Source: Entomortierella parvispora E1425
Taxonomy: Eukaryota > Fungi > Mortierellomycota
Length of the DNA stretch: 64,000 nt
Assembly: GCA_020891255.1 (NCBI GenBank)
Contig: BQFW01000008.1
Location: forward strand, 1,550,001-1,614,000
Reading direction: 5' to 3'
The position numbers were made by a program, and so were the translations under genes. The notes under the pieces are model-generated. The model worked only from the letters and a program-made list of their open reading frames with translations, was not told the DNA's origin and ran no database searches. Of the stretch, positions 11,259 to 30,097 are shown in pieces (position 1 is the first letter of the stretch; the number at the start of each line of letters is the position of its first letter).

Positions 11259-13886
11259 CTACGTCGAGGCTGCATGAAGATCTGGGACCTTTTGCACAAT
11301 TGAATCCACGAGGGTGTTGCCGTTCAAGATCTGAGTCGTACAAATCACAAAGTCGCGTTGTCCACCCTCTTGCGAAGCAAGAAAACGTGTGGCCGAGATC
11401 TCTGTGAAAGTGCAACCGCCCAGGAAGAACACAAGGGAGATTCTAGGCTGGCCATTCATCCCTAATACAATGAGAAAAAGTGATGTCCAGTAAGCCATGG
11501 GGTTTTTTAGAACAAAAATTGAGACAAGCGGGTATTCAGACATATCACATCTCATCATCTTACTCTTGGACGATCTAGGCTGGCCGTCCTCTACTCTCTG
11601 TGTCTCATCAAATGTCCGCCCAGGGAGCATCCGCAACACATCTTCGAATCCTCTCCAGCCGTTCCCGCCTGCAATCCCGCCTCTATTTCCAGGTCCTTGT
11701 TTGCCACCTTCCTGTCCACGTTGGACCACACACTGCACCAGACGCACACTCAGAGGAGCGTATCCAGAGTAAACATATGAAATGTCATTGGGCGCATGTT
11801 CGTTCACCTCATCCACAATCAAGGAGAGGCTGCGACGGACAAGACCATAGGTGTTTTTGGTATTGACCTGTTTCGTCAGCATTCCGAGTTTTCGAAGTGA
11901 TTCGAGTGTGATGATGTGCTCAAAGCCATAGGTCTCCAAGATTTCCTTCTTGAAAAACTCGAATTGCTTCGCCTTGAGTCCGTTGTTGACGAGAGAGTAC
12001 AGGCAAAGTAGACGTAAAACCTGTGTCAGTGGTGCCTGCTTATTAATCATCTCCTCGATGTATTCTGGCTCCTTGTTTGTGGCGATTCCAGCAACAATAT
12101 CTAAAGCGTTACAAAATCCATCAAGCTGCATTAGCTTTCATTATCTTTTGATCGTCAGCGACAGGTCTTTTGTTCGAAAAAGAAGTCCATCACATACTCT
12201 GTTGGACTTCCAAGATTCGGTTGAAGTCATCTGTCATGGTGTAGTTCATGATTTCTTCGGCAAGCGCAGTGTCTATTACGATCAGGTTTGAAGCCGGTTA
12301 AGTGAGCATCGCAGTTGATGGCGGCAACCAGCAGTTCAGCTCCTGAGCTGGTTGGGTCACTTACGAAGTCGAAGAGACTGATGTTCTGCAGCAAGTCCTC
12401 CCATCTTGACAATGAATTGTCGAATCTGTGGTACAGTCTTTGCGTTGTGGCGTTCCTCGTAATCGGCGTTGATCCTTTTAGCTACTTTGTTCAACAAGCC
12501 TCCAACGACTGCGAAATTGAGATCACGAAGCTCTCCAAAGAGCTTGTCACCTCCATTGAGCGGGACCTTCTTGTTTTTCCCCGGAGCCGCTCCCGCTGAT
12601 GCCGATCCTCCTGCCGCATTGGTGCCTGTGCCAACTAGACTGGGATCGACTTCCACAAAGGCTATGAGAGCGTCCGTACAACCTGAAAGTCAGATGATCG
12701 AGTGCGGCGATATCACAACTAGACTTTCACATCAACCATTGCGACTTACAATTCTTGATATGGAATATCTCGTCAATAAGGCCTTCGTATGTCAGTTGCG
12801 TGCAAAGAGGCGTCACCATATCCACACTGCGGTCAATGATGATCAGCGAATCAATATTTTGGGACAGCTGCATCGTTTGGGATGCATCCAAATCATCCAC
12901 AGCCATCTCGCGCCTCATGCGAAGCATCATATCACACAGCGCTTTAGAATAGTCTCCCTTCCCAAGGATGCGAGGAAACAATCCATAGATTCCCTGAAGT
13001 CGCATCAGTGCTTTAGCCGCGTAATAAATAGACGTCGTGTCCTGCTCCAGATACAATTCTTTGAAGGTCGAGTCCCACTCCAGACTGAGTACATCATCCT
13101 CCAATGGGATCAAATCCAAATGATACTCTCCCTTTGTAATCTCGCCAAACACGCCTGCATCTTCCAGGTACTTCTCACAGAGTGCTGTGCGTCGAGGAAC
13201 AAAGAAAAGAGAATACGTGTACGCTCCTGACCGTGCTACTCGAGTATGGGTGTGAATGTGTTCTATAAAACAATAGCACGTATGCATTACGCCGTTAAAA
13301 TCGATAAGATGAAGTCTCGCCACAGTCCTGGATCCTTTTTGCTCAAAATGGGGGGTATCCAACTTGCCTGCAATATACTTCATGTAGTTGACTTGAGGTC
13401 TGCAAATGTAGATCAGGTTCTTGCAGTCTGTCTCCAATGGTCCAGGTTGAAGGTGATATATTTTCTCGACGCCATGGTCCTATCATTGATATAGGGTGGT
13501 TTGCAATGTTTAGTCCCGAGTCGTTGCTTGAACACGTCCAATCCTTTCGGAAACGGAACCGACATACCTTAAGAAGTGCAAATTCCGCAATGAGACTCAG
13601 CGGTCCACTGAGGTTAGGGTCGAGGATGAGACCCTTCTTGCCTTGAACCTGAATATAAAATCAGACGTGTGCACATATGTGTTGGTCAGAAAGAGTCTTT
13701 GCGAGGCAAAGAGAGCCATTTTTTAGTTTTTAGAAGGACCTGTACCGAATCAAGAACATTGACAAGTTCCTTCCGAGCAAGGTCCCTCAATGAGTCAATG
13801 TTCAGGGATGTGTGTCCGAGATGTGCGCCTGTGGGTTGCGCTGGGGTAGAAGCAGCGGCGACAGCAGCGGCTGTAGAGCTTGACAT
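11259..13886 (-). CDS. VPS33: Vacuolar protein sorting Vps33 (Sec1/Munc18 family), multi-exon
   Basis: Motifs LRDLARKELVNVLDSV, YSLFFVPRRTALCEKYLE, LIPLEDDVLSLE, LIIIDRSVDMVTPLCTQLTYEGLIDE, LFGELRDLNFAVVG, VLRLLCLYSL, YVYSGYAPLSVRLVQ and LVFFLGGCTFTEISA. An in-frame upstream ATG at 13952 is an alternative start. Confidence 0.96.
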
Positions 13887-14156
13887 TGTAGATGTGTTGT
13901 CGCCTCGGAATAACTTGCTGGGTCGACGGTTGGATGTGCTGCCAAGATGCATGCATGAGCGCGCGACTTTTGTGCTCCTCGGGTCTCTCGGTCACGTGGT
14001 GCCCCGTGACGAAGCAAGCTTTGAATCGCGCTTGTGGGCGGACACGCGCGCATGGTCAGGCCTCCCTTTTCCCCTTCTTCCTCTCGCACCTTTCTCTCCT
14101 CCTTCTCCCTTCTCTTCTCTTTTCTCAAGATATCACTTTCTTCCTCTATTATCTCC
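13887..14156. promoter_or_regulatory. Short divergent (probably bidirectional) promoter between VPS33 and the YhfC-like gene
   Basis: Head-to-head start codons lie 270 bp apart, with a CT-rich tract at about 14060-14155. Confidence 0.55.
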
Positions 14157-15565
14157 ATGCCCTCTAGTCCGACCCATCTGGATCCCTCCCGTACCCCTGT
14201 CGCCACAAGCCAGCCGTCATATGGATCCGTCTCCGCCAACCCCCAGGGGCCAGCTGTCATTCTAGGGGCTGGAGTTGGTTCAACGGTCGGGGAACTCTCT
14301 ACCACGAACCGATCCGTACATATCGTTGTCCCCTCTCGGAGTGGCCTCAGTGACAATGACAACAACGATGCCATCTCCATCTCAACAAAGTCCTCTTACT
14401 CGACCTATTCCTCCCTGCAAGACCTGGACGCTGCCTCTGGCAAGAGATCTTGCGACGACAATAGCGACAACGATGATGATAGTGACATCAATGCGAGCGC
14501 CCGGAGATTGTTTTGGATCTATGTGGCCTTGGCACCGATCCTGCTTTCCATCCTCGTCTTGTTTGCGGGTCTCCTCCAACTATTGCCAGCAAATGACCAA
14601 GAAGGATATCTCATTCATTGGGGTAAAAACACAAACAACACATTTTCAGATCTTCTCATTCCTAGAAAATGATGGCCCTGCAGTCTTCTTCTGTCCCAAC
14701 GGTACTAACATGTCGGTTGTCTTCCGGTTACTATGTCTTGCACCTTTCTTCCCCTCTCCTACTCGTCCTTCAATTTACAGACAGCTTTGGCGTGGGAGCC
14801 CTGGGCTGGATGTTCACATTTGGGTCAAGAACGCCGATTTTCGCTCTTCTTTCCAACATCCTGGAGCTGAATTCTTATTGCTGTGAATGGTACACGCTGG
14901 TCTTGGGCGCAGCTGTCGAAGAGATCACTCGATGGATCCTTTTGTCAGCCCTGAACATCCGAAGCGACTTTGGGGCTGTTTACTGGTTGGGACTCGGCTG
15001 GGCCGGCATGGAAACCATTTACTATATTGGACAATCACTAGTTTACTCACACTGGCTATCGGATGATGACTATCGCGCAGTAACTACAGCCACCTCTATC
15101 GGGGTTATGGACGCAATTCACCAACAGCAAGATGACGAGGGCGAAGAGGACGAGGAACGCAGGCTCGAGTCCATAACTCGCAAAGATCCTGAGAATGAGT
15201 TATTGCTACCAACAACGACAACAACGACAACGACTTCCACAGCTGCGGTCAGCCTGGATTCAGATGCAGGGGAAGAAGATGTCTCGACAAGAGAGGTGCG
15301 CCACCTGCTGGGGATCGACCGACCCTGGTGGAGTCTGATGGGTAGAACTTCAAGCATGATGGTTCATCTTGGACTCTGCGGGTGGTTGGGATATGGTGGC
15401 TGGAAGCTTTTGGTGCCCGCGGCGATGATTCACGCTGCTATTTATGTCCTATGGGGGGTCTTCATGCCAGGAAAGTGGTCAGTCCCGGCAGCTTCTTATG
15501 GAACGCTCATGACAGCCATGGCTATCTTTTTGATTGGATTAGCCCTGTACGGTCAAATTGTATAA
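14157..15565 (+). CDS. Multi-pass membrane protein of the YhfC/PrsW-like glutamic intramembrane protease (CPBP-like) superfamily; one intron (about 14623-14780)
   Basis: ATG 14157 (MPSSPTH). The splice TGG G/AC AGC gives IHWDSFGVGALGW. It has about 7-8 hydrophobic segments and the motifs AAVEEITRW, GLGWAGMET, RTSSMMVH and MIHAA, which match the EExxR / GxGxxxxE / H / H pattern. Confidence 0.72.
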
Positions 15566-15816
15566 TATTCTTCTCAAAAAAACAACAAACAAGCCCGTTT
15601 ATTGGGGCTGTAATGAGAGTGCGTGCACAACTAACTGGTCAATGAAATGGGCTAAGGGAAACGTGATATATCAATCGTTGGTTATGGGCTGTCTGCAGCA
15701 TCAGTGGCGGATGTCAGCCCAAGATCCTTCTTTGCGCCGCCTTCCAAATCAAATTCGGTCAAAAACTATATGATAAAGATGTAATTGTTAGCCAACATTA
15801 TCCATCTGTCAGTCTA

Positions 15817-18800
15817 TCAGTTTGCGTTTACAAAACGATACAAAGATTTGGACAATACCTTCTCCACTTCATCCAACAAATCATCACCCTCTCCATCCTC
15901 ATCGTCATCAAAGAACTCATCGTCTCCTTCGTCCTCATCGTCTTCGTTGGTATTGGGGTGTTCCTCTCCCTCATTAGTCTGATCTCTCTTGGTATCTGCC
16001 GAGGATGACGACGTTGAAGTATCCAACGTGGTGTTGTTCGATGTTGACGTAGAGGCCAAAGTCGAGGTCGATCCACTTGAAGACTTTGATACAGTGGAGG
16101 ACACTGCAGATCTGTTTCTGTTCTGGATTCCACCAGCGATGCTTCCGGCCAGTTTCCGTCCTTCAGAGAGAAGAGAGTCAAACACCTCGCGGGCAAAGAG
16201 GCCACGTTGACGGTCCAAGGGCTCCAACAGCTTGAACGAACTTGAGAACCCAGAGTCGAAAAACTTTTCGAGGGCCTCATCAGCCAACACCACCATACGA
16301 AAGCTGGGCAACGACATCTGGATTTCTGGCTCGTCCGCAGTCGTCACAGTATCTTCCTTTTCGCTTGCGGTGGTGGTGTCGGTTTCTTGAACAGATCTTT
16401 CGGAAGCAGCACTGTTGTCTGATTCATCATCCTTGGTCTCCTTATCCTCTTCAGAGGGATTGCCCAGATCAATCAAAGCCTCCTCGTCGCTTCCCTTCTT
16501 AGGAGACTCTACCTTTTCCGCAAACTCAAATGCGTTGCGGATAAAATTGGAAATGGCACTCAGATAAGAGTCGCCGTCATCAAACCGGAAGATGAACAAA
16601 AGGCTCTCTGACATGCCTAGAATCTCGTCACGACTGAGAGTACCATCCTTGTTGAGGTCATGCATATCAAAGAATAATTGCATCCTGGTCATCAAGTCAC
16701 CGTGGATGATGTCGCCTAGACCGGTCGTCACTTCCTGGAGCGACAGTAGGCCTGTACCGTTTTGATCAAACCGTTCGAAAAGGCGAGAGATAAAGTGTCG
16801 ACCCACGATTTTGCGACGTTCTCGGGTTGTGGAGGTGGTTGAAGTCGATCCTCGTCGGCGGTGTTGTTGAGGCGAGCCATTCGTAGGTCTGAAATCATCA
16901 TTGTCCATCTGATCATCCTCTACTTGGGCCCAATGGGCAATACTACCCAGGAACGACACAAATGTATTCGAGTCCAACGCACGCGCCTCCTGTTTGACTG
17001 AACCTCCACGTTGTTGACGACCATAGAACAAAGCAGAGTAGAACCGATCATAGATGACAGACATCTCATCCTTAGAGAATTTTCCAGGAGTAATGTTACG
17101 GAGCTGACTGCGTTTTGTGAAGCTTCCAATGTTGTGCACCACCTTCAATTGATGGTTTCGCCTCAGTTCTGCCACCAGTTCAGGAGTCACAGATTCGAAC
17201 TCCTTGTATGCTACCAACATAAGCTCATTGAACTTTGTCAAGGCCCTTGCCTTGGGGTTGGTGCTATTGGGGAACGCCGAATCGTCCAAAGTACCAAAGT
17301 ATTTTTTCAACACGTCCATGAACGCGCCATCATCTTTGGAGGCCAATAGTTCGTCGCCATTGACCTTAAGAATAGCTAATAGGACGAAGGATTAAGAGAG
17401 CAGTTGTCAGAATATAGCAAGGACATAGATCCTAGAGCACCCTTGGAATTGCCAAATAAATATACCTAAGCTGATCTGGAACAAAACCTTGGGTCCCTCA
17501 AAGAAAAAGCAATCCAAGACGCGGAATGCATAGACAAGTGGCATCGAGTTGATGAAGAGGCTTAGAAACCAGGGAAGACAGGCCACAGAGAGTTGGACGT
17601 CCACCTTCTTCAGGTGTTTGCTCAGAATTGGCATCGTCTTTTCCAGCAGGTGCTCAAGAATAGTCTGATCCAGCAAGGCACCGTACATGGAGGTACTGTA
17701 GTATCCAGGCAAGAGACGGTCGCAAAGAACGTTCAGCGTCCAGAAAGCCTGCTCCTCGCTCTGATAGCTATCAAATCAATGCGTGGTTATAGAATTAGAA
17801 TGGAAAACAGTTTTGGTCGTTTTCGACAGAGAAACTGAGTGCTTACATCAGAATGGCACTGGTAACAATGTTCATCGCTTGGCAGTATCCCAGATCAGGG
17901 TTTTTCCAAGCATACGCACTGAGCACATTACGGAGTCGGTTGATACCCTGGTTGGCCTGGTACGCTTGATATTCTGGCAATGATCTGAAAATAAAAGAGA
18001 GTTAATTATCTGAGCTTACAAAAAAAAAAAAAAAAAAAAAGGAAATAAAAGAGCACATATTGAGATATTGAGTTCGCGAGCCTTGCCTATTCAGATCCTT
18101 CTCAATCTCCTCCAATGACAATGACATTTTGCCTTCATTGTCTTTTAAAAGCCGAGTATATTCTCCAGGATTCATGGATCGAAGGTAGAGCGAACCACTG
18201 CATGCCTCCCAGATTTCACCTCGTAGTTTGTTGGGGAGTCCAACGCGGATGAGTTTTGGAAACGTGGCAACTTTGGTCATAGTCAAGTTACGGCCATTGT
18301 CCTTGAAATATTGCAGCCAGAGCTTAGTTTTGCTCTTGTTTTTCAGCCTGTAAAGCGAAACAATGATTAGTATTTCTAGTTCAGAAAGACATTTTTGAGC
18401 TGAGGAGTGAGGAGACTGTGCTTACTTTTTGGGGTCGCCTGGGAACTCAAAGATCCATCCGAGTCCAGAATCCTTCTCAGCTACATCAGGTCGGTCAGCA
18501 AGGAGCGCTTCAGAAAAGCAGGTAGCCAAAAAAGGCTTCAAGGACCTCATGGCCCTCACCTGCAGCTTCAGGTTGGTCTTTAGAGTCCCGCAGAACTTTT
18601 CGCACTGAGTGATGGGGCCATTCAAACGAAAGACGATTCTCATCTGATGCCAAGTCAGAATATTGAGTGCGTACATGGCGGTCCTAGAGTTCATTCGTTC
18701 GACCCGTCGAATAGTATAAAGTGGTAACACGAGTATACAGGGGTCGGCTTCCACGCAAATAAAGCACAGGAAAGACTCGGACATGTATAAACGACCATGG

Positions 18801-20296
18801 AACATATCGGTCTTGTCTCCTTGCACCATCGTTGCACTGGAATCTTCCATCATATGCTCCGACGTGGGCAAATTGAACCGAAGTTGAAACTGATTGTCCC
18901 TCTTTTGTTCCTCAAGACCCAATCGCAATGGTCGTGTCGTCGGTGCTGGTGAATGAGGAGAGTCGTTTCCGTCAAGATTTTCCACGTCTACAGAGAACAC
19001 GTCCTTGATCGTCTCGCCATCGTCTCCGTTTGACATTCCTGGCGCGTGTTCCAGAGCAGTGTTCCGTAAAAGACGTTCCATAGTGAGCGTAGTCAACTGA
19101 ACCAACATGTCGTATGTTTCATCTCGATGGAAGAGATTTGAGAAAAAGTACTAAGAATTACCAAGGTGCCCAAAAAAAAAAAAAAAAGAGGGAATAGTGA
19201 GCAAAGTTATCGCCACTCCACATTCCAGGTTATAATAAGCTTGACATCCATACCTCCTGAGAATCCTTCATAACCACTCGAATGGCATCCGCAAACACGC
19301 CACGTTTGCTCTTCTCCTTTTGCAAATCGCCAATATCTTTGAGCTCCAAAAAAATCTTGGTCTCCATGCCGAGCATGAACGAGTAGAAGCAGAGATAATT
19401 TTCCGAGATGTACATCCATCCTTGATTCATGACTCTGCCATGGTACGAGCACGAGTAGTAACTGACGAGGCGTTCAGAGGGCAGCACGTTAAAAGTCTGT
19501 CGGAACGCACGGGAGGCACTCCGGACCTTTTCGTCCGATGTGATATCGTCCGTTCCCTTGTCTATTAAGAGTGAGACCAATAAAATGTCAGTGTCCGTTC
19601 CTGCTGCATGGATGGATACATTTTTGTTTCCTTCAAACGGGCAGATCCCCTAGCCAGTCAGATGTGTAATACCTGCTCTCGTAACAAGAGACCTGATCTT
19701 TGTCAAGACCCACTCTTCTTTTTCCTGTGGGTCATCCAGCACCTGCAATCCAATAACGAAATTATCTAAGGGGTCATCAAATGAGAGGTTTTAGCCATGT
19801 TGTCTCGACTTCTTAAAAGCTCTCCAAACTGCGTCACTGCAATCCTACCTTGCACCCAGCTCCATGCCTGGTCGATGCTCTTTTGGGTTTCTGCCTCGCC
19901 AATCATCAATGCCTGGGCGTCGATCTGACGACGAAATAGGATGCGGAACGGAGCCTGCTTGGTGTCAAACCTATTGATGTGTCATATAGTAGGCTGTTAG
20001 CTATGCATTTGCAGCCAACGGCAGTGCGGACAATCTCTTCGCGGGACAACGGGAAGCTTGATTCCAGCGATAACGGCAGAGCAGACAGCACGGCATTCAC
20101 ACAGACTGATAGGAAGGTTCACTTACACATTCTGAATAGTTCCTAAGAACGAGTTCAGGAACTGGCTCTTGGAGGCCTTTGTACGTTGAAGCAAAAAGTT
20201 CTCGGTGGACTTGAGAGTGTCAAAGAGTGGATTGTTCTGATCGCATGGCGTGGGCAAGATGAAGACATGGGGCGGAGGTTTGAGATGGTACGCCAT
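15817..20296 (-). CDS. MDR1: GRAM-GRAM-TBC-EF-hand Rab GTPase-activating protein (Mdr1/Gyp2, TBC1D8/9 type), multi-exon
   Basis: N-terminus [19 protein letters not shown]1 [32 protein letters not shown]; GRAM2 [17 protein letters not shown] motifs [24 protein letters not shown] and [26 protein letters not shown]-hand [17 protein letters not shown]. Confidence 0.94.
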
Positions 20297-20873: not shown

Positions 20874-22136
20874 TTAGTACTCGCGCCCATTCTCGTCTTT
20901 GCCATGGTCCAACGCGTCGTGCTCGTCGTCGGTTGTAAGACCGGCAGGGGCCTGGGTGTTTGTCCGGGTCGCATGCTCCTTTCGCAGCCTTGTCACCATC
21001 TTGGTCCAGGATGTCGACTTTACTTCCCTATCCAATTGATCAATCACATTGTCCGCGGACTGACCCGTCAAGGCTGTCAGCCGTCGGACCTCCCTGATGA
21101 TGACCAGGCGATTGGAGTAAAACTTTCGCTCCTTGATGCTCGTCCGCCACTTCGTACCATGTTTCTTGTCCATTTGTTCAACTGACGGCAGTAAAGGAGA
21201 GAGGCCTATGGTCCATTCATTCCATGCTTCACGGACAGTGTCGATCCCGCGACTCATCTCGTACGTATCCGGTACCAGCTCCGCGGGTAGGCGTGCATGT
21301 TCGTTCGCGGCCGTCAAGTCGATAACGGGTTGATGAGAGGAGCTGCCACCATTAGTGCTGGAGAATTCTTGATCTGTAGTTCTCGCCTGCGACAACATTT
21401 TCCCTCTACTGCTGAAGGTCTTTGCTTGGCCCTCTCTCTGAGTTGTCAAGCCAGAGGCCGGGGTGATTGTCGAGGCAGTGGTAGCGGGTCGGATGCTAAA
21501 AGTGCCATTATGACTTACAACAGCAGTACGCGGTACAATGTTTCGCGATGCTGACGCTGGTGATGGTGAAGGCGAAGACGGGGATGAAGAGGAAGATGAG
21601 GAAGAAGGGATTCCTATGACGGAATTTGCGTCTGCCAATCTAATCCTTTTGCGAGCAGTTTCTATTGCTTGAGATATCGAGCTCGTCGATCCAGCCATGA
21701 TACGCTCCATCGATGTAATGGACTGTTCTGAGGGTCGTTGCAGTGACGAACTTGCTGCGCCATGGCCAGGTTGCTGAAGCTCGTTTGTGTTGAGTGATCC
21801 TTGAAGTGCATACGACTCGGCAAAAGAGTCCAAAACGTTCTTGAGCGAATCAGCCTCACGTGTGGATTTTTCCAGTGCATCATTGAGAGCGTCAGAGATA
21901 TTCTGAATAGCCTGTTGTGCCACTTGAAGAGTCTCTGTCTTGATCCTCTGTTGCTCCTGAAAATACCCAAAAGCTTTTTGAAAGAACTCTAGCTGAGCAG
22001 CACGCGTTTGTGCCGATTCCTCTCGAATCACATTCACAAGTTTAATGAACGGGTCGTCCTCTGCAGACGCATCAGTGTGGGATGCTGGCGCAATTCCAGT
22101 GGGGCGTGATCGTGATTTCTCCTGAGGTTGGGGCAT
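20874..22136 (-). CDS. Intronless 420-aa protein with a C-terminal GCR1_C DNA-binding domain (Gcr1/Msn1/Hot1/Crypton type)
   Basis: YEMSRGIDTVREAWNEWTIGL..PSVEQMDKKHGTKWR...ERKFYSNRLVIIREV fits the remembered GCR1_C consensus. It also has an N-terminal predicted coiled coil and a central S/T-rich linker. Confidence 0.85.
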   Translation of the reverse strand: MPQPQEKSRSRPTGIAPASHTDASAEDDPFIKLVNVIREESAQTRAAQLEFFQKAFGYFQEQQRIKTETLQVAQQAIQNISDALNDALEKSTREADSLKNVLDSFAESYALQGSLNTNELQQPGHGAASSSLQRPSEQSITSMERIMAGSTSSISQAIETARKRIRLADANSVIGIPSSSSSSSSPSSPSPSPASASRNIVPRTAVVSHNGTFSIRPATTASTITPASGLTTQREGQAKTFSSRGKMLSQARTTDQEFSSTNGGSSSHQPVIDLTAANEHARLPAELVPDTYEMSRGIDTVREAWNEWTIGLSPLLPSVEQMDKKHGTKWRTSIKERKFYSNRLVIIREVRRLTALTGQSADNVIDQLDREVKSTSWTKMVTRLRKEHATRTNTQAPAGLTTDDEHDALDHGKDENGREY

Positions 22137-22244: not shown

Positions 22245-22877
22245 TCATGACTCAATGCTGACTGTGTGAAAGCCAACGAGGAACTGGTCGACCCATCCAA
22301 GGACCCAGATGTGAACCCTGGTCGATGAAGCAACTGTGACCCTGTACAGTGCCAAGAGTCCCTCTTCTTCCTCCTTGTCTCCTGTTTGGGTTGCAATATG
22401 TTGTGATCCTATGGCGTGATAATGAAAAATGTCCCGAAGAGCGTGCTCTATCTTTTTAGCCCCAGGGTGGGTGTTGGCAAGGACTTGCTTCAGGTCGAAG
22501 GTCCTCTCACAAGAGAGCTCTTCTACGTCATCGTCCTCCGAGATAAGGTGCATTTCCTCGATTAGCTGCAGGAACTCGGCCTCGGTCGGTAGTGGCAAAC
22601 TGCTGGAAGACGGAGTGGCGGCGTGTTCTTTGGGGATGTGAACAATTTCGAAGGGCTCCTCTCCTTCAGAGACAAAGATGGCATCCTCAAGAGCGACCTC
22701 CAGGGTCTTGATCGCGCGACGCTGGTTGTCAGATAGTGTGGAGGCTGAAGAGTTGGAGTCTATCTTTTTTTGGCTGTTGGTTTTTGCAGCGACCAAGGGC
22801 TTTGCACCCACGCCTGGGATGTCGCGTGTCAGTAGGGACATGTAAGCGATGTCGTCCTTGTTCTGTTCTTGGTCCAT
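22245..22877 (-). CDS. Intronless 210-aa NuiA-like (nuclease A inhibitor-like) protein
   Basis: ATG at 22877 (MDQEQNKDD). LEVALEDAIFVSEGEEPFEIV resembles NuiA LKQASDGLLFMSESEYPFEV. The C-terminus LYRV..VHIWVLG..LVGFHTVSIES* resembles VYRLG..LDVYVIG..LAGISTKVVET* (NuiA recalled from memory). Confidence 0.8.
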   Translation of the reverse strand: MDQEQNKDDIAYMSLLTRDIPGVGAKPLVAAKTNSQKKIDSNSSASTLSDNQRRAIKTLEVALEDAIFVSEGEEPFEIVHIPKEHAATPSSSSLPLPTEAEFLQLIEEMHLISEDDDVEELSCERTFDLKQVLANTHPGAKKIEHALRDIFHYHAIGSQHIATQTGDKEEEEGLLALYRVTVASSTRVHIWVLGWVDQFLVGFHTVSIES

Positions 22878-23376
22878 GTCGTGTCTTTGGTGAATGAAAT
22901 GTGAATGAGGAAAGAAAGACAGAAACCGCCCCAATACGTCACTTTTTTTTTTTTTTTTGCGTGAGGAAAAAAAAAAACGCGTCCCCTTCTTCCTTCTTCT
23001 GCCAATCACGTTCGACTTGCAGGAAGCCAAAAAGTCAACGGACAAAAGACGCGCAAACAAGCGACTGAAGAACACCGATGCAGGGAAAAGAGAAGCGAGG
23101 GTAGAAGGAGAGTGGGGGAGTGAGCAAGGGAAAAGCGAGGGAAGACTTTGTGCACAAGGCTCGCAACGACGGAACAACGGAACGCAAATAAAAAATAAAA
23201 AAATAATAAAAAACAAGCGCAACGAAAGAGAGCGTCTGGTCTGGTCTGGTCTGGTCTCTCTGTCTTGCCTTGCCTTGTCCACCTGCGAGTGCAGTGCGAC
23301 AAGAGAAGGTCAAGAACACGAACAAGAACAAAGAAAAGGGTCGCTACGCACCGTTCGTCTCTTTTCTTCTCTTGCC

Positions 23377-23509
23377 TCTTCTCTCTTCTCTCTTCTCTTT
23401 TCTCTTTTCTCTTTTCTCTTTTCTCTTTTCTCTTTTCTCTTTTCTCTTTTCTCTCTTCTCTCTTCTCTCTTCTCTCTTCTCTCTTCTCTCTTCTCTCTTC
23501 TCTCTTCTC
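23377..23509. repeat. Polypyrimidine heptamer tandem array (TTCTCTC / TTCTCTT units)
   Basis: About 130 bp of near-perfect 7-mer repeats, in blocks that switch between two variants. It lies within a larger CT-rich leader/promoter (about 23360-23880) upstream of ROM2. Confidence 0.9.
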
Positions 23510-23902
23510 CTCTGTCATTTGCCTCTTCCATTTTTTTTTTATTTTATTTTATTTTTTTTTATTTCATTCTTTCCACTCTTCCTCTTCACTCTTCATCCCT
23601 TCTTGTTTTTCATCATCATCTTTCTCACTCTCTCCTTCTCCTTCTCCTTCTCTCTCTCGCTCCCCCTCTCTATTTCTCTCTCTTTCATTCAATTCATTCT
23701 TCACTCACTCTTGCTTCCTCTCTTCCCTCCCATCCTCATTTCCGCCAGCATGACCATCCAATAATCCATCTAATTATTATTAATATTCTCTCCTCTCCGT
23801 CCCCAGCTTATCTTCTCCGCTCCTCTCTCTCTCTCTCCTCTCTCTCTCCATCGCCCTTCTCCTTCCTCGCTCACAAGGAAACTCAACCACACCCAGCGGA
23901 CC

Positions 23903-24229
23903 ATGGCCGACAACCAGGCATCCCAGCCCGACCAGGCCCTGACCGCCTCCCCCGTCGCTGCCAATGCCTCTGCGGCCTTCCCGCCTGGCGTCACCACCAC
24001 CAACGCCAACCACGGCTACACCAGCGCTCAGTACGTCTCGCGCCACCGACCCGCCTCGACGGTGCCCAGTCCAGGTGGACCATCGTCACTCCAGGGTTCT
24101 TTTGCTTCCCAGCCTATGCGATCTCAAACCCTCGCCTCTGGACAGCAGCAGCAACAACAGCAACAGCAGCAACCACTGCCTGCCCAATCCCACGGTTATG
24201 TGCTTCCTCCGCCACATCAACAACAACAA

Positions 24230-24262
<33 letters not shown>

Positions 24263-27200
24263 TTGATGCAGAAACAAGGATCACCCTTGAATGGCCCTGT
24301 TGGCTCTAGAGGATTTGTTAATGGCCCATCGCCGCCCTCCCGCAATAGCACCTTGCCATCGCCATCAAGGCCGCCGACGATCTCCTCACCCCTTTTGCAA
24401 GGACAGATGCAGCAGGGAGGCGGGCCATCGCCCGTCATGGACCCTTACTCTACCTCGCCCAACTCCCCACGGTATTCCTCGGGCGGCAATCCGCGATTGT
24501 CAGGACCGGCATTGGGGGGACCGATGCGACCTACAGGATCGCTGGTTCGACCACCTGGCCCTTCATCTGGATTTGGACAGTATGGGTCGCCACCCATCCG
24601 ACCCATGAATTCGAATTCAGGACAGGGATATTCAGCCGACTATGTGCGGGCACCTGTGCGACAGACCCCGTCTCCGTACAACGGGCGTCAGGACGGGATG
24701 GCACAGACTGCAGCAGCCCAGGGTCTGGGCATGGGCGCTCCTCGGCCGTTCCGGCCGCCTCCTCCTCCGCCTGCCCCGCCACTGCAGCAGCAACAGCAGC
24801 AGCCTGTTCGGTACTCGAGCCAGTCGCTCTCTGGGTGGGAGCATGGACCCTCGCAGCATCCTAACAATCGGCCACCGCCGTCCTCCTGGAACGACGCTGG
24901 TACTCAGAACGGATCCGGGGTAATGAACCACCGCCGCGCGACTTCGACTCAGCTGCAGCCAACGTACTATGGCAATGAAATGGCGAACCTAGACAGACAG
25001 ACATCCGTGGCCTCACGGTATAATAACGGCACTTCGCATCATGCAGGACCTTACCCTCATAATCCAGTAGCACCACAATACCAACATCAGCAACAGCCTT
25101 ATATGGCTGCTTCAAACCGCCAACTTGTTCGCCATAAATTGTCAGACCCTGGTGGCCCAGGCGGACCAGATGGATACTACTATCCAAATGCACCGTACAG
25201 AAAGCTATCCCTTGGAGAAGGTATGGATGGAGCTAGGATCAGTCTGGACTCGACAGCAAGCGTTGAATCCGGATACACCAATCGTCAGCCATCGTTGTAC
25301 CCAGTTCCCAACGTGTACAGCCGCGATGCTGACCCGAGTTTAGACTCTTTTTCACCCAATCGACAGCGGTCAGCATCCAAATCGTCTACATACTCTGGCC
25401 ACTCTGTTTCCGATTACTATGCAGATTTTGACAGTGGAGCTGCTCCTCGCTCCGCCACGCCCAACGGAAGTACCCCTCAAATCTCAATTCAGTCTGCACA
25501 AGGGTTCCCTACCAGTAGGGCTGACCCATTCTCAATGCGTGCGCGCACCCCTTCCCCAGGACGCGCTCGTCAAGGATCCAACCCTCCATTGGTGCGAGCA
25601 GGTACGTTTGTTTGCACTTGAATATATACGATTACTGCTTCCTTTTTATAATAGCCAACTCTCTTATTGACCGATACTTCTCCCTTTTTTTAATTGTATA
25701 CAGCCAATCCTCCCGTGTTTTTAGCAACCAACCTACCACAGTCGGAAGCTGCTCGTCGAAGTACAGAGCTTGTTCGGTTACCCGCCTCACAGGCTATCAG
25801 AGGAACGGGAGAACGATCCATGTCCATGTCATCCCATACACCTCCACCATACGACATGATTGCCCGCCACAATGTGATGGGATCCGTCTCTGCTGGTTCT
25901 CTGGGCCCTACTTCAGTCAAGAAGCCACCAATTGTATACCCAGCCCTGCTTTCCCGCGTCGCCAATGCTTTTGTGCAACGCATTACAACTTCTCCGAGGA
26001 TCAAAGACTCTATCGAATACAAGGACTGCTTTGATGGGCGTGATGCAGTGGTAAATTTTGCAATCATGGTTCAGGTTGGAAGGATACCAAAAACAGGTCA
26101 TTGCATCCTGTTGCAGAGCATTTAATCTTTTGTGTTTTTTTTTTTTTTTCTTTTTGCTGGTGGTCTTCAGGACAAGATCGCGTTCATTATCAAAACTACG
26201 GATAGAAATCTTGCGTTGTTGCTGGGACGAGCCCTGGATGCCCAAAAGCTCTTCCACGATGTTACTTATGACCACAGGCTCCGTGACAGTGTGAACGAAC
26301 TCTATCAGTTCCGCAACAAAATGATTACAGGAGGACCTCGCATCCGCTCCATGGAGTCTGTTGACTATCGGCCTGCATACCCTGCGGAAAAGCAGACGAC
26401 GACCGATGATAATGACTCTGTGAATGGAGTCTTCACTCTTTTGACCGATTGCTATTCTCCAACGTGTACCCGAGATAAACTGTGCTATAGTATTGCATGC
26501 CCCCGACGATTGGAACAGGTCAGTGCTTACGGCAATTGTAGCACGAGCGCTTTGGCGTTATGCACGGGTTCTAATAATAGTTGCCTTTTTTGTACCTTTA
26601 CGCCCTTTTATTTTAGCAATCGCGGTTGAACTTGGCGCCAAACGGTGGTCTCAAACGTGCTTTGAGTCGGTCATCTTCAAAGGAAAAGAAGGATCAACGA
26701 CTTTGGATTACCTCTGTGCCCAAAGAAATTTCAGATGCACTGTCTTCGGACGAGAAGAAGCGACAAGAAGTTATCTATGAGCTTGTTTACACTGAGAAGG
26801 ACTTTGTGAATGACCTCAAGTATCTCAACGATGTAAGTCAAGTCACTGGACGAGCCACTTTAAAAAACGTATCGATTACAAGGCATTGGTGTATTGATAC
26901 TTCTTTTTATTGTCTTAGAAATGGATTGTACCTATTCGAACTATGGACACTCTCCCTGAGCCTAGGCGAGAGGCTTTTATTGACAGAGTCTTTTACAACA
27001 TCAAGGATGTTTACAACGTCAACTCCAAATTGGGCGAGGCCTTACTGAAGAGACAGCAGGCGTACGCTGTTGTTCCTGAGATCGGTGATATATTCATGGA
27101 CCACGTGTACAATTTTTCGCCGTTTGTCCTCTATGGCGCGAACCAGATCGAGGCCAAGTACGAGTTTGAGCACGAAAAGAACACAAACAGCTACTTTAGC

Positions 27201-30097
27201 AAGTTTGTCGATGTAAGCTTCTGACCAGATTGGTTGTGAATAGCATGTTTTCATTCTTGGTCGCAATGAATCTTGTTTTAGAGGTATTAACTGGCGATAT
27301 GCTTTCATTTTTCTTGTATTTCAGGAAACTGAGCGACGACCGGAATCCCGAAAATTGGAACTCAACGGCTATCTGACAAAACCAACGACCCGTCTGGGAC
27401 GTTACCCACTGTTGCTGGAAGCTATCCTCAAATATACTCCGGATGACAACCCTGACAAGAAGACGATCCCCGTGGTTATTACTATTATCAAGGACTTCTT
27501 GCAGAAAGTTAATTTGGAATCCGGCAAATGCGAGAATGCTTTCAACCTGCGCCAGATCAACAAGGGTTTGACCTGGAAAGGAGAGCCAATGGTATATACG
27601 GCTTGAATGAAGTCTTGATGTCCAAGAATGGGGAGAAGGTATAATCTAACCCCTTCAATTGCTTTACTTGTTGTAGGAACTTAATTTGCTTGCAAAAGAC
27701 AGACAATTGATCATGAAGGGACCTCTGAAGAAAAAAGGCACCAGCTCAGAACATGCCGATATCTACGTATTTGTGTTCGACCATGTGCTGTTGCTGACGA
27801 AAGAAAAGAAGGGAAAGGGCATGGAAGGCTACAAGGTGCACAAGCGACCAATCCCTCTGGAACTTTTGACCTTGTCTACCATGGAGGAGCCTATCATGAA
27901 ATCGACCAAAAGGTCATCGTCTCTGATACCGCACAAATCAGGATCGCATGCCAGCAACGTGGTTTCCAAGATCACACCAACGTCCAATCCATTGTCCAAG
28001 ATCACCTCCGACTCTAAATCCGGATACCCCATCGTCTTTACTCACATTGGACGATATGGTGGCACATTCACCCTATACGCCACTACACCTGTTGGAAGGA
28101 AGAGTTGGATGGACAAGATCCAGAACCAAATCCAGATGCTCAAAAACAAGGCAGACTCTTGGAAACTTCTCCCAGTTTCTGAAAGGTTCTTCTCTGCGAG
28201 CAACAAAGTCAATTGCTCAGCAACCTATGGTATGTGGATGTGCTCTTCTTGTATTTCATGCGGAATCATTTACAGTGACGAGAGCGCTGGCGGATTTTGA
28301 GAGTTGTCACTAATAGATTGATGCGATTGTGTCGTAATAGATAATGGAAGGCGACTTGTCATTGGCACAGACGCTGGTGTATTTGTGGGCAGAGGCAAGG
28401 GTCAGCTCGTCAAGATTATCCCTCGGGAGCGTGTTTCTCAAGTGGATGTGCTGGACGACGAACGTATTCTGCTGGTTTTGGCTGATAAGCAATTGCTGGC
28501 ATATGGTCTTGAAGCATTGGAGCAAGATGACCCCAATTCACCCAGCAAGAAGGCCAAGAAGCTGGGATCCTCCGTCAGTTTCTTCAAGACGGGTGTTTGC
28601 CAGAACCGAACTTTGGTGGGCATTGTCAAGAACTCGAGCAACGCTCTTGACTCTAACTCGACCATCAAGACCCTGGAGCCTATTGAGCAGGATGGGTCCA
28701 AGAAGAACAAGCACAGCCTCCGGACCATGCTGCGCGGTGGCAACAGTGAACTCTTTAAGCTTTATAAGGTAAGTCGGACCCCTTTCTTTGTTAAGCTCTC
28801 CTGGATAAATATTGCTTTGCCAACCATGACTTGCTACCCTAGGACTTCTATATCCCGCGCGAGACCAACTCGCTTCACTTTTTGAGGAATACCCTCTGCG
28901 TTGGATGCAGTAAGGGATTTGAGCTTATTGATCTCTCCAATCTGAACACCCAAGATTTGTTGGATTTCAGTGACCCGACCTTGGACTTTGTCCATAAGAG
29001 GGATGAGAATCTGAAACCACTAGCGATTTATCGCATTGGAACGGGCGATTCATTCACGTTCCTTCTGTGCTATGAAGGTACGTACCATCTTTTTATATTT
29101 CAAAAAGATTTCTAAAAGGGGTGTATGATTTTCATACACATACTGATATTCAACAATCCTTTTTTTCCTGATAGAATTCTCGTTCTATGTCGACAAGACT
29201 GGTCGCCGAGCTCGAAATGGCTGGATCATTCACTGGGAGGGAGTGCCGACTTTCTGTGCTTTGTCGCTGCCCTATGTCATTGCTTTCGATCCGTCCTTTA
29301 TTGAGATTCGACACGTGGAAACTGTAAGTATAGCTCTTGTTATTGCACCATGTTCTTGCACAGGAATGACGCTGCTAGTCCAACGATTGAATACTGCAGG
29401 TTTGCAAATGATTAATCGCTCTCCATCATGATAGGGCGATCTTGTTCAAATTATTCCAGGCAACAATATTCGGTGCTTGTACCATGTCGCCAACCAACCT
29501 GGCGCTATCCATGTAGTGATGGTAAGAAGGAGATGCCTGTGGTCCGAAAATTGTCTAAATAGTTAAGCGTTCCGTGTTGCTGACCTTGGTTATTCTCTTT
29601 TGGATATTTAGACGGACGAAGAGGGAGATTACCAAACGGTAGCCAAGCTCTGTCGCGAATCGCAGATTGCAGGGCTGTTGGGGGTCGATGCCGAGGAAGA
29701 CCATCTTCCCATGTATACTTCTGGCCTTGCAGCGGGAGCAATTCTTGAGGAGGAGGAAGGCGAGTCCCATCATTCTATGACACCCGATGAAGAAAAGAGT
29801 CAGTCTTTGGTCTCGGGCAGCCACGGTGGCGTTGCAGATGAGGATGAGGATGAAAGTGGAACCTACAGTCCCATGGATGGTCCCTATCCACATCATCCTA
29901 GCGGTCTGAACCGGCCAATGAATCGCCTCACCCTGGACTTTGGGGAGGGCTTTGATCTCGGCTCGGCCTCTCCAGACAGTCCTCAGAGTTTGCAAGATAT
30001 TCTCGACATTGGTTCAGGGGTCATGGTCCAGAGCGGCTCCTCAAGCTCCTTACCACTCAGAGATGAGCATGATAGCCCGCGAGCTACATATATCTGA
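23903..30097 (+). CDS. ROM2: Rho1 guanine-nucleotide exchange factor (Rom2/Rgf1 type; DEP-DH-PH-CNH), multi-exon
   Basis: Long Q/P-rich first exon. DEP: VYPALLSRVA..YKDCFDGRDAV, LALLLGRALDAQKLFHDVTYDHRLRDS. DH: EKKRQEVIYELVYTEKDFV, LNGYLTKPTTRLGRYPLLLEAILK. PH: GPLKKKG..YVFVFDHVLLL. CNH: VSQVDVLDDE..LLVLADK, LPYVIAFDPSFIEIR. Confidence 0.96.

What the first reader, a model, noticed from the sequence alone, without database searches (positions are those of the whole stretch)
22245..22877. Fungal homologue of the cyanobacterial nuclease inhibitor NuiA, with the inhibitory residues intact
Seen: FVSEGEEPFEI near the N-terminus, and a protein ending exactly in LVGFHTVSIES*. Established (recalled): Anabaena NuiA (FMSE24SEYPFEV ... 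LAGISTKVVET135*) blocks the beta-beta-alpha-metal nuclease NucA using Glu24 and its free C-terminal residue, and it normally sits beside nucA. Both determinants appear conserved here (E retained, terminal T to S), but there is no partner nuclease gene nearby. The gene is intronless with an acidic N-terminal extension and no obvious signal or mitochondrial presequence. Inference: a probably horizontally acquired, cytosolic or nuclear inhibitor of the EndoG/Nuc1 family (NucA homologues), analogous to Drosophila EndoGI. It could protect against leaked mitochondrial nuclease in cell death, or against NucA-like nucleases from bacterial endosymbionts or competitors. This may be an undescribed fungal nuclease-immunity system.
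Basis: partly seen in the sequence, partly recalled or inferred. Interest (0 to 1): 0.82.

Follow-up and report, generated by a model that had tools for sequence, protein, structure and literature searches.

The report
Fungal NuiA-like nuclease inhibitor gene
This soil-fungus gene encodes a true relative of the cyanobacterial nuclease inhibitor NuiA that keeps both inhibitory features, but it belongs to an old, fungus-wide and already catalogued family (Pfam NuiA_2) whose target nuclease nobody has yet identified.

Summary
It passes the Pfam threshold for PF23151 NuiA_2. Two independent AlphaFold models match only NuiA in the PDB (2o3b chain B, Z 11.8 and 12.2; runner-up below 6), end to end. 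Glu71 aligns with NuiA Glu24, and the protein ends exactly where NuiA ends. The ending is [VI]-E-[ST]-COOH in about 150 fungal and 120 cyanobacterial sequences.

The interpretation needs correcting in three places:
- **Not recent transfer.** The family occurs in Mortierellaceae, many Ascomycota and Schizosaccharomyces pombe. It sits in lineage-conserved synteny, has ordinary base composition, and fungal members resemble each other far more than they resemble bacterial NuiA.
- **Not uncatalogued.** Pfam and UniProt already call these proteins "NuiA-like". I found no paper on any fungal member.
- **Target unknown.** No nuclease gene lies nearby here or in five other fungal loci, whereas 76 of 80 cyanobacterial nuiA loci have nucA adjacent.

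Best reading: a cytosolic tight-binding inhibitor of a DNA/RNA non-specific (ββα-metal) nuclease, most likely the fungus's own Nuc1/EndoG-type enzyme. Many ascomycete orthologues carry mitochondrial-presequence-like extensions, which fits that target. No binding or inhibition data exist.

The parts
22248..22877 (-). Complete intronless coding sequence, 210 aa (stop codon at 22245-22247)
   Evidence: It aligns end to end with 22 Mortierellaceae orthologues. There is no upstream in-frame ATG.
22806..22856 (-). Fungus-specific N-terminal helix motif (residues 8-24): D9-x2-Y12-M13-x-hydrophobic-L16-x-R18-x2-P21-x2-G24. Function unknown.
   Evidence: Invariant or nearly so in Mortierellaceae. The same pattern is present in Ascomycota and is a gap in all cyanobacterial NuiA. 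Predicted as helix 7-17.
22737..22805 (-). Variable, low-confidence linker (residues 25-47)
   Evidence: pLDDT below 50 for residues 28-36 and 40-42. Length and sequence vary among orthologues.
22248..22736 (-). NuiA-like domain (residues 48-210), with two lineage-specific loop insertions (about 82-98 and 153-174)
   Evidence: VIA-align against 2o3b_B: model 48/49-210 matches NuiA 1/2-135, Z 11.8 and 12.2, rmsd 2.9 and 2.6 A. Pfam PF23151 above its threshold.
22650..22670 (-). Putative inhibitory loop S70-E71-G72-E73-E74-P75-F76. Glu71 (22665-22667) is equivalent to NuiA Glu24.
   Evidence: hhalign pairing. In a 246-sequence alignment, S, acidic, x, acidic, x, P are conserved in at least 85% of Mortierellaceae, Ascomycota and cyanobacteria.
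22248..22256 (-). Strictly terminal I208-E209-S210-COOH, equivalent to NuiA V133-E134-T135, whose terminal Thr binds the nuclease Mg2+
   Evidence: C-termini are VET in 116/120 cyanobacterial, [VI]ES in 121/122 ascomycete and IE[ST] in 27/29 Mortierellaceae sequences. The other two of the 29 do not end in the motif: P0028 stops at profile position 176 of 214 and P0026 at 198. Global hhalign aligns the termini. The role of the terminal Thr comes from PMC2790893 and PMC5587815.

Best explanation
The gene encodes a small, acidic, soluble protein with no signal peptide or presequence, so I infer it is cytosolic or nuclear. Its C-terminal 163 residues adopt the NuiA fold. I propose it acts as NuiA does, as a stoichiometric tight-binding inhibitor of a DNA/RNA non-specific ββα-metal nuclease (Pfam Endonuclease_NS). 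In this model the flexible acidic loop (S70-E71-G-E-E-P-F) enters the active site in place of the scissile phosphate. The hydroxyl and carboxylate of the very last residue (Ser210, preceded by invariant Glu209) bridge to the catalytic Mg2+.

The family is inherited vertically across fungi and is unlinked to any nuclease gene. The most likely target is therefore the fungus's own Nuc1/EndoG-type nuclease when it reaches the cytosol or nucleus. That would make it a functional counterpart of Drosophila EndoGI built on a different fold.

Shown: homology, fold, conservation of both determinants, family distribution. Inferred: binding, inhibition, identity of the target, localisation.
For: - **Family and fold.** Pfam NuiA_2 is above its cut-off. 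Orthologues P0006 and P0029 and the ascomycete P0042 also pass the cut-off of the original NuiA model PF07924; P0006 does so almost full length, 63-229 against 3-129 of 130. Two models (pLDDT 63.5 without any bacterial sequence in the alignment; 77.8 with a deeper alignment) match only NuiA strongly: Z 11.8 and 12.2, 119-120 of 135 residues, terminus to terminus.
- **Determinants.** The positions conserved across Mortierellaceae, Ascomycota and cyanobacteria are concentrated at the two inhibitory elements: S70/S23, E71/E24 (Asp in Ascomycota), acidic 73/26, P75/P28, E209/E134 and terminal S/T. They also include Y178-R179/Y105-R106 and G202/G127. The protein end is fixed to the residue in about 270 sequences, as expected if the free terminus is functional.
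- **Published mechanism.** The C-terminal Thr of NuiA directly coordinates the catalytic Mg2+ of NucA (PMC2790893, PMC5587815). PMC5374557 describes a Glu24-Asp121 hydrogen bond in this complex; the text labels the chains inconsistently, and I read Glu24 as NuiA's.
- **Link to a mitochondrial nuclease.** Of 116 ascomycete gene models, 74 carry an N-terminal extension before an invariant internal Met. In 38 Met-started extensions the first 30 residues are presequence-like (K+R 16%, D+E 2%), and 32 of the 74 extensions have an R-x-[FYL]-[STAFY]-[STN] motif within 30 residues of that Met.
- **Expression.** A spliced transcript contig exists for the Hyaloscypha orthologue.
Against: - There is no experimental or docking evidence of binding to any nuclease.
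- No nuclease gene is linked, here or in five other fungal loci.
- This protein itself scores below the cut-off of the original NuiA model (18.5 against 22.1 bits).
- A fungus-specific N-terminal motif, absent from NuiA, is as conserved as the inhibitory motifs and is unexplained. It could point to a different or additional partner.
- NuiA's Trp76 is invariant and Asp75 nearly invariant in cyanobacteria. I saw no matching pair in Mortierellaceae.
- No S. cerevisiae protein appeared among the Swiss-Prot structural hits, although budding yeast has Nuc1. The pairing cannot be obligatory.
- No RNA data were available for this species.
Confidence: 0.55

Rival explanations
1. It uses the same inhibitory mechanism, but the target is a secreted or vacuolar Serratia/NucA-type nuclease of the fungus. 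The cytosolic inhibitor would be a safeguard against enzyme that folds before export or is mis-sorted. This is exactly the Anabaena NucA/NuiA logic.
For: This is the documented role of NuiA: constitutive cytosolic inhibitor, secreted nuclease (PMC13522737, PMC2790893). The window protein has no targeting signal. From memory, untested here: relatives among Mucoromycota (Cunninghamella, Syncephalastrum) secrete Serratia-family nucleases.
Against: I could not survey this genome for secreted Endonuclease_NS paralogues. The presequence-like extensions of ascomycete orthologues point to mitochondria rather than the secretory route. From memory, S. pombe carries the family but is not known to have a secreted NucA-type enzyme.
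Confidence: 0.2
2. The NuiA fold has been re-used in fungi for a task other than nuclease inhibition, for example binding another Mg2+-dependent enzyme or acting as an adaptor through the fungus-specific N-terminal helix.
For: The N-terminal motif is conserved and fungus-only. No nuclease is linked. Sequence identity to NuiA is only about 20%. Weaker structural neighbours (PsbP, Maf1, Mog1; Z about 5) are non-nuclease binders.
Against: The residues conserved across all three groups include exactly the two elements that NuiA inserts into the nuclease active site. The chain end is fixed to the residue. That is hard to explain without a similar metal-site-directed mechanism.
Confidence: 0.15
3. 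It is immunity against foreign NucA/HNH-type nuclease toxins delivered by bacterial endosymbionts or competitors, acquired recently from bacteria.
For: From memory: Mortierellaceae commonly host endobacteria. NuiA homologues are abundant in bacteria (282 loci).
Against: The family is pan-fungal, including S. pombe and many Ascomycota. It is syntenic within lineages and compositionally native. It is much closer to other fungal members than to bacterial NuiA (against 32 and 37). No bacterial relative of the fungal profile was found in the prokaryotic genomes scanned or in the 1.84-billion-protein profile search, whose 13 hits all appear fungal by name or sequence.
Confidence: 0.07

Closest known systems
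Pfam PF23151 NuiA_2 ('NuiA-like'), including S. pombe uncharacterized protein C21B10.02 (Q9USW0)
   Same: The window protein scores above the family cut-off. It shares the N-terminal D-x2-Y-M-x-hydrophobic-L motif, the S-[ED]-x-[ED]-E-P-F loop and the [VI]-E-[ST] terminus with ascomycete members. Q9USW0 is the top Swiss-Prot structural hit.
   Different: The Mortierellaceae branch is divergent: 26-30% identity to the ascomycete rows of alignment A5. It has two extra loop insertions and Glu instead of Asp at the key loop position. It lacks the E-W-D motif and the long N-terminal extensions seen in many Ascomycota. No member of the family has a studied function.
Anabaena/Nostoc sp. PCC 7120 NuiA (Pfam PF07924; PDB 2O3B chain B, 1J57)
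   Same: Same fold, terminus to terminus (Z about 12). Equivalent acidic loop residue (Glu71 and Glu24). Equivalent E-[ST]-COOH terminus and conserved Y-R and Gly positions.
   Different: About 20-22% identity, and below the PF07924 cut-off for this protein. It has a 47-residue fungal N-terminal extension. The terminal residue is Ser instead of Thr. No adjacent nucA, whereas 76 of 80 cyanobacterial loci have one. It is a eukaryotic nuclear gene.
Drosophila EndoGI (inhibitor of EndoG; PDB 3ISM)
   Same: Proposed role only: a nuclear/cytosolic protein that neutralises a mitochondrial ββα-metal nuclease by presenting acidic groups to the active-site metal (PMC2790893).
   Different: The fold is unrelated (a helical tandem-repeat solenoid, against the alpha/beta NuiA fold) and arose independently (PMC2790893). 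EndoGI binds a metal-bound water, whereas NuiA coordinates the metal directly.

Membership tests
Pfam PF23151 NuiA_2 (fungal NuiA-like proteins) | HMM score above the curated gathering threshold | tested here: met
   35.7 bits against 27, E 1.1e-8. All 22 close homologues carry precomputed PF23151.
Pfam PF23151 NuiA_2 (fungal NuiA-like proteins) | Profile-level homology to ascomycete members over the whole domain, including the C-terminus | tested here: met
   hhalign of A2 against A1: probability 98.3, E 1.4e-14, 124 columns running to the last residue.
Pfam PF23151 NuiA_2 (fungal NuiA-like proteins) | Fungus-specific N-terminal motif (start of the Pfam model) | tested here: met
   D9, Y12, M13, L16, R/K18, P21 and G24 are shared by Mortierellaceae and Ascomycota and are gaps in bacterial NuiA.
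NuiA proper (PF07924; inhibitors of NucA) | HMM score above the gathering threshold | tested here: not met
   18.5 bits against 22.1 for this protein. Orthologues P0006 (30.6 bits, near full length) and P0029 (28.0) do pass.
NuiA proper (PF07924; inhibitors of NucA) | NuiA alpha/beta fold | tested here: met
   2o3b_B: Z 11.8, rmsd 2.9 A, 120 residues; Z 12.2, rmsd 2.6 A, 119 residues. Foldseek E 1.8e-4, prob 1.00, the only significant PDB hit.
NuiA proper (PF07924; inhibitors of NucA) | Acidic residue equivalent to Glu24 in the S-E-x-E-x-P-F loop | tested here: met
   Glu71 pairs with Glu24. It is invariant in Mortierellaceae and Asp in Ascomycota.
NuiA proper (PF07924; inhibitors of NucA) | Hydroxyl residue as the very last residue, preceded by Glu (the metal-ion bridge) | tested here: met
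   The protein ends ...I-E-S* and NuiA ends ...V-E-T*. The termini align and are conserved in all groups.
NuiA proper (PF07924; inhibitors of NucA) | Gene adjacent to its nuclease gene (nucA) | tested here: not met
   76 of 80 cyanobacterial loci have nucA next to nuiA. No hit in the 64-kb window or in five fungal loci. Fungal neighbours are RhoGEF, RabGAP, isocitrate dehydrogenase or RPL3 genes.
NuiA proper (PF07924; inhibitors of NucA) | Binds and inhibits an Endonuclease_NS nuclease | not testable with these tools
   No complex prediction or assay was available.
EndoGI-type EndoG inhibitors (Drosophila) | Tandem helical-repeat EndoGI fold | tested here: not met
   The model is an alpha/beta NuiA fold. 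PMC2790893 states that NuiA and EndoGI folds are distinct. Only a functional analogy is possible.

The most novel reading that the evidence does not exclude
PF23151 proteins are the long-missing fungal inhibitors of mitochondrial Nuc1/EndoG. They would descend from a bacterial NuiA-type immunity protein and be fixed in early fungi. In Pezizomycotina they would be made as two isoforms from one gene: a presequence-bearing mitochondrial form and a cytosolic form started at the invariant internal Met. In Mortierellaceae only the cytosolic form would be made. They would set the threshold at which released Nuc1 damages nuclear DNA or attacks cytosolic RNA viruses.
Probability: 0.3. Interest if true: 0.7.

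Novelty: new member of a known kind. Interest (0 to 1): 0.5.

Why it matters
Outside Drosophila (EndoGI), I found no described protein inhibitor of eukaryotic EndoG/Nuc1, although the nuclease is tied to cell death, mitochondrial DNA metabolism and, in yeast meiosis, attenuation of RNA viruses (PMC6697816 abstract). A fungus-wide protein that keeps the two active-site-directed elements of NuiA gives a concrete, cheap hypothesis to test. S. pombe has a member (C21B10.02), so genetics and pull-downs are straightforward. If confirmed, it would show a bacterial secreted-nuclease immunity module re-used to control an organellar nuclease. It would also supply a compact natural inhibitor scaffold for ββα-metal nucleases. 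If the target proves not to be a nuclease, the strictly fixed C-terminus still marks an unusual mechanism.

Tried and rejected
- **PDB sequence searches.** Searches with the protein and with fungal profiles gave no NuiA hit. A weak PylRS N-domain match to the ascomycete N-terminal motif (E 0.02) is treated as chance.
- **NCBIfam.** No model matches, even for NuiA itself.
- **Profile search of 1.84 billion proteins with the Mortierellaceae alignment.** It found only 13 clusters, all apparently fungal by name or sequence. This shows how divergent the branch is, not that the family is small.
- **Scan of prokaryotic genomes with the fungal profile.** No relative found.
- **RNA evidence.** No RNA run was listed. 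DNA runs hold the locus. Laying four runs with the same species label at 85% likeness gave only low-complexity matches, at the poly-T tract near 22943-22960 and the CT-rich repeats, so it says nothing on transcription.
- **Ghosh et al. 2007 (NucA-NuiA structure).** Not held by the library. The role of Glu24 as a phosphate mimic therefore rests on my memory of that abstract, plus the Glu24-Asp121 contact mentioned in PMC5374557.
- **Rigorous donor/HGT tree.** Not attempted. My bacterial sample is almost entirely cyanobacterial, and a three-group unrooted tree cannot test nesting.
- **Complex prediction with a nuclease.** Not possible with the tools.
- I dropped that row and did not resend it.
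- **Fungal secreted DNase paper PMC6401486.** A term search did not show the enzyme's family, so it is not used as evidence.

Full report
**1. The observation**

The minus strand of window 22245-22877 holds one uninterrupted ORF of 210 codons plus a TGA stop. There is no in-frame ATG upstream. Twenty-two homologues, all named ones from Mortierellaceae (Gryganskiella, Mortierella, Podila, Linnemannia, Dissophora, Modicella, Haplosporangium), align over the full length at 35-75% identity. The gene is therefore real, intronless and correctly delimited.

The exact protein is not in the 15-billion-protein collection. Its nearest relative is a 75%-identical metagenomic protein, followed by Gryganskiella cystojenkinii at 60%.

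I read authentic NuiA from plasmid pCC7120alpha (L001:28843-29247). It contains LLFMSESEYPFEVFLW, with Glu at position 24, and ends KVVET, with Thr at position 135. nucA (PF01223) lies convergently 8 bp downstream.

**2. Is it a NuiA homologue?**

Yes, and three independent lines agree.

- *Profiles.* Pfam PF23151 NuiA_2 ('NuiA-like') scores 35.7 bits against a cut-off of 27 (E 1.1e-8). The original NuiA model PF07924 gives 18.5 bits, below its cut-off of 22.1. The orthologues P0006 (30.6 bits, residues 63-229 on model positions 3-129 of 130) and P0029 (28.0 bits) pass it, and NuiA itself weakly hits NuiA_2.
- *Fold.* An AlphaFold model built only from Mortierellaceae sequences (pLDDT 63.5) has NuiA (2o3b chain B) as its single significant PDB match (Foldseek E 1.8e-4, prob 1.00). 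VIA-align gives Z 11.8, rmsd 2.9 A and 120 aligned residues, with model 48-210 on NuiA 1-135; the next entry has Z 5.3. A second model from a deeper alignment (pLDDT 77.8, pTM 0.70) gives Z 12.2, rmsd 2.6 A and 119 of 135 residues, with the runner-up at 5.8.
- *Residue pairing.* hhalign pairs FVSE71GEEPFEI with FMSE24SEYPFEV. A global profile alignment against 120 cyanobacterial NuiA sequences pairs the two C-termini.

**3. The two determinants**

I aligned 246 sequences with MAFFT: 26 Mortierellaceae, 113 Ascomycota and 107 cyanobacteria. The aligned columns that are at least 85% conserved within each of the three groups and carry the same residue, or the same acidic character, in all three are the following:

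- S70/S23
- E71/E24 (Asp in Ascomycota)
- an acidic residue at 73/26
- P75/P28
- Y178-R179/Y105-R106
- G202/G127
- E209/E134

The final residue is Ser or Thr in every group.

The chain end is fixed to the residue. It is VET in 116 of 120 cyanobacterial sequences, [VI]ES in 121 of 122 ascomycete sequences, and IE[ST] in 27 of 29 Mortierellaceae sequences. The other two of the 29 do not end in the motif: P0028 stops at profile position 176 of 214 and P0026 at 198.

Published structures state that the C-terminal Thr of NuiA displaces a water and directly coordinates the catalytic Mg2+ of NucA (PMC2790893, PMC5587815). The role of Glu24 as a mimic of the scissile phosphate is my recollection of Ghosh et al. 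2007, which the library does not hold. PMC5374557 mentions a Glu24-Asp121 hydrogen bond in the complex; its text labels the two chains inconsistently, and I read Glu24 as NuiA's.

Conservation of exactly these elements, and of a free terminus, over the whole fungal family is the main argument that the mechanism is retained.

**4. What family, and how old?**

The profile search of 1.84 billion representatives with the Mortierellaceae alignment returned 13 clusters. One of them (P0030) turned out to belong to a very large ascomycete group. Searching with P0030 gave 414 significant proteins; the 120 listed come mostly from Leotiomycetes and Sordariomycetes, and nearly all are annotated 'hypothetical protein' with PF23151.

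The ascomycete and Mortierellaceae profiles match at hhalign probability 98.3 (E 1.4e-14), right to the last residue. S. pombe C21B10.02 (Q9USW0) is the top Swiss-Prot structural hit, and no S. cerevisiae entry appears. The ESM Atlas lists clusters auto-named 'Nuclease A inhibitor-like / NuiA-like domain-containing protein' that are 95-98% eukaryotic, mainly Ascomycota. AFDB cluster hits were numerous, but organism names were masked.

Synteny is conserved within lineages. In Mortierellaceae the gene follows a DEP-RhoGEF-PH-CNH gene, both in the window and in Gryganskiella and Podila. In Leotiomycetes and Sordariomycetes it follows the RPL3 gene. CDS GC (0.522) and GC3 (0.605) resemble the neighbours. 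A pattern scan of 185,579 prokaryotic genomes with the fungal profile found no relative.

Recent horizontal acquisition by this fungus is therefore not supported. An ancient bacterial origin of the whole fungal family remains possible, and I could not test it because my bacterial sample is almost all cyanobacterial.

**5. Partner nuclease**

In 76 of 80 cyanobacterial nuiA loci a NucA homologue lies within the flank, typically convergent and a few bases away. In the window and five fungal loci there is none, even at E 10. Fungal neighbours are ordinary housekeeping genes. The target must be encoded elsewhere, and I had no access to the rest of the genome. Earlier notes on this genome mention only Fanzor-type nucleases.

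**6. Fungus-specific features**

All fungal members have an N-terminal motif that bacterial NuiA lacks: D9-x2-Y12-M13-x-hydrophobic-L16-x-[RK]18-x2-P21-x2-G24. It is predicted as helix 7-17, and its role is unexplained.

The window protein begins with an acidic stretch (first 30 residues: D+E 17%, K+R 10%) and has no hydrophobic leader. I infer cytosolic or nuclear residence.

Ascomycete orthologues differ. Of 116 gene models, 74 extend by 30 residues or more upstream of an invariant internal Met (M-A-S-D-E-D-Y). In the 38 Met-started extensions of 30-100 residues, the first 30 residues have K+R 16% and D+E 2%, against 11% and 19% in the domain. Thirty-two of the 74 extensions carry R-x-[FYL]-[STAFY]-[STN] within 30 residues of that Met, which resembles the R-3 mitochondrial processing motif.

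This suggests a mitochondrial long form and a cytosolic short form in Pezizomycotina. It is circumstantial support for a mitochondrial nuclease (Nuc1/EndoG) as the target. It rests on gene models and composition only. A spliced transcript contig of the Hyaloscypha bicolor orthologue, with two introns removed, shows that the family is transcribed.

**7. Mechanism and rivals**

- *Best reading (0.55).* An NuiA-type stoichiometric inhibitor of an Endonuclease_NS nuclease, probably the endogenous Nuc1/EndoG enzyme.
- *Secreted-nuclease safeguard (0.2).* The same mechanism aimed at a secreted NucA-like nuclease that is mis-sorted or folds too early.
- *Repurposed fold (0.15).* A fold with a non-nuclease partner, suggested by the unexplained N-terminal motif.
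- *Recently acquired immunity to bacterial nuclease toxins (0.07).* The pan-fungal distribution contradicts this.

**8. Novelty**

At database level the homology is already recorded (Pfam PF23151, UniProt-style names). The window gene is a new, rather divergent member of a known kind. Functionally the family is untouched. Full-text searches for NuiA-like, PF23151, PF07924 and SPBC21B10.02 found nothing, and none of the 38 papers containing 'NuiA' concerns fungi. The scan had also noted this same stretch as a 'NuiA-like + GCR1_C tandem'.

**9. Limits**

- There is no binding, docking or expression evidence for this species.
- Structural claims rest on predicted models.
- Localisation is inferred from sequence.
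- The absence from S. cerevisiae rests on one Foldseek search.

Noticed in passing
window 20874-22136 (-), and L002:10948-12261: A 420-aa intronless gene with a GCR1_C DNA-binding domain (PF12550, E 4e-19) lies 108 bp downstream of the NuiA-like gene on the same strand. A homologue sits in the same place in Gryganskiella, where no gene was called. It is absent in Podila, where an isocitrate/isopropylmalate dehydrogenase-family gene (Pfam Iso_dh) follows instead. The adjacency is therefore local to close relatives, not a family-wide module.
   Followed up: partly
Proteins P0030-P0151 (ascomycete orthologues); loci L003, L004: Many ascomycete gene models carry mitochondrial-presequence-like N-terminal extensions before an invariant internal Met. 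A second class of long extension in Helotiales has a conserved G-L-x-D-E-H-L-A-[ST]-x-P-P-P motif, and some of these start MGxxxS. The Hyaloscypha transcript contig has at least 427 nt upstream of the start codon, from which an 86-bp intron has been spliced out. Alternative isoforms seem likely.
   Followed up: partly
window about 23000-23760: The intergenic region between the NuiA-like gene and the divergent 572-aa ORF (23903-25621, no Pfam hit) is a long CT/AG-rich low-complexity tract. It yields overlapping spurious ORFs (SLFSLLSS... on one strand, EKREERREK... on the other). A T16 run sits at about 22943-22960, just upstream of the start codon.
   Followed up: no
window 11259-19108 and 26132-28885: Exons of a Sec1-family gene, a GRAM/RabGAP-TBC/EF-hand gene and a DEP-RhoGEF-PH-CNH (Rom2-like) gene flank the locus. 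They are in the same order as in Gryganskiella contig JAAAIG010000017, which shows conserved synteny.
   Followed up: partly
Proteins P0130 and P0020: Two database names look wrong. P0130 (Apiospora marii) is called 'ribosomal protein L3', probably because the RPL3 gene is the upstream neighbour in Ascomycota. P0020 is called 'ATP-dependent exoDNAse (exonuclease V) beta subunit' by JGI although it carries only PF23151.
   Followed up: no
L001 (pCC7120alpha 360-408 kb): Besides nucA/nuiA, this stretch of the Nostoc plasmid is annotated with three thermonuclease-family genes, a NucS-domain endonuclease gene, a 3'-5' exonuclease gene and two TnpB genes. That is a notable concentration of nuclease genes.
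   Followed up: no
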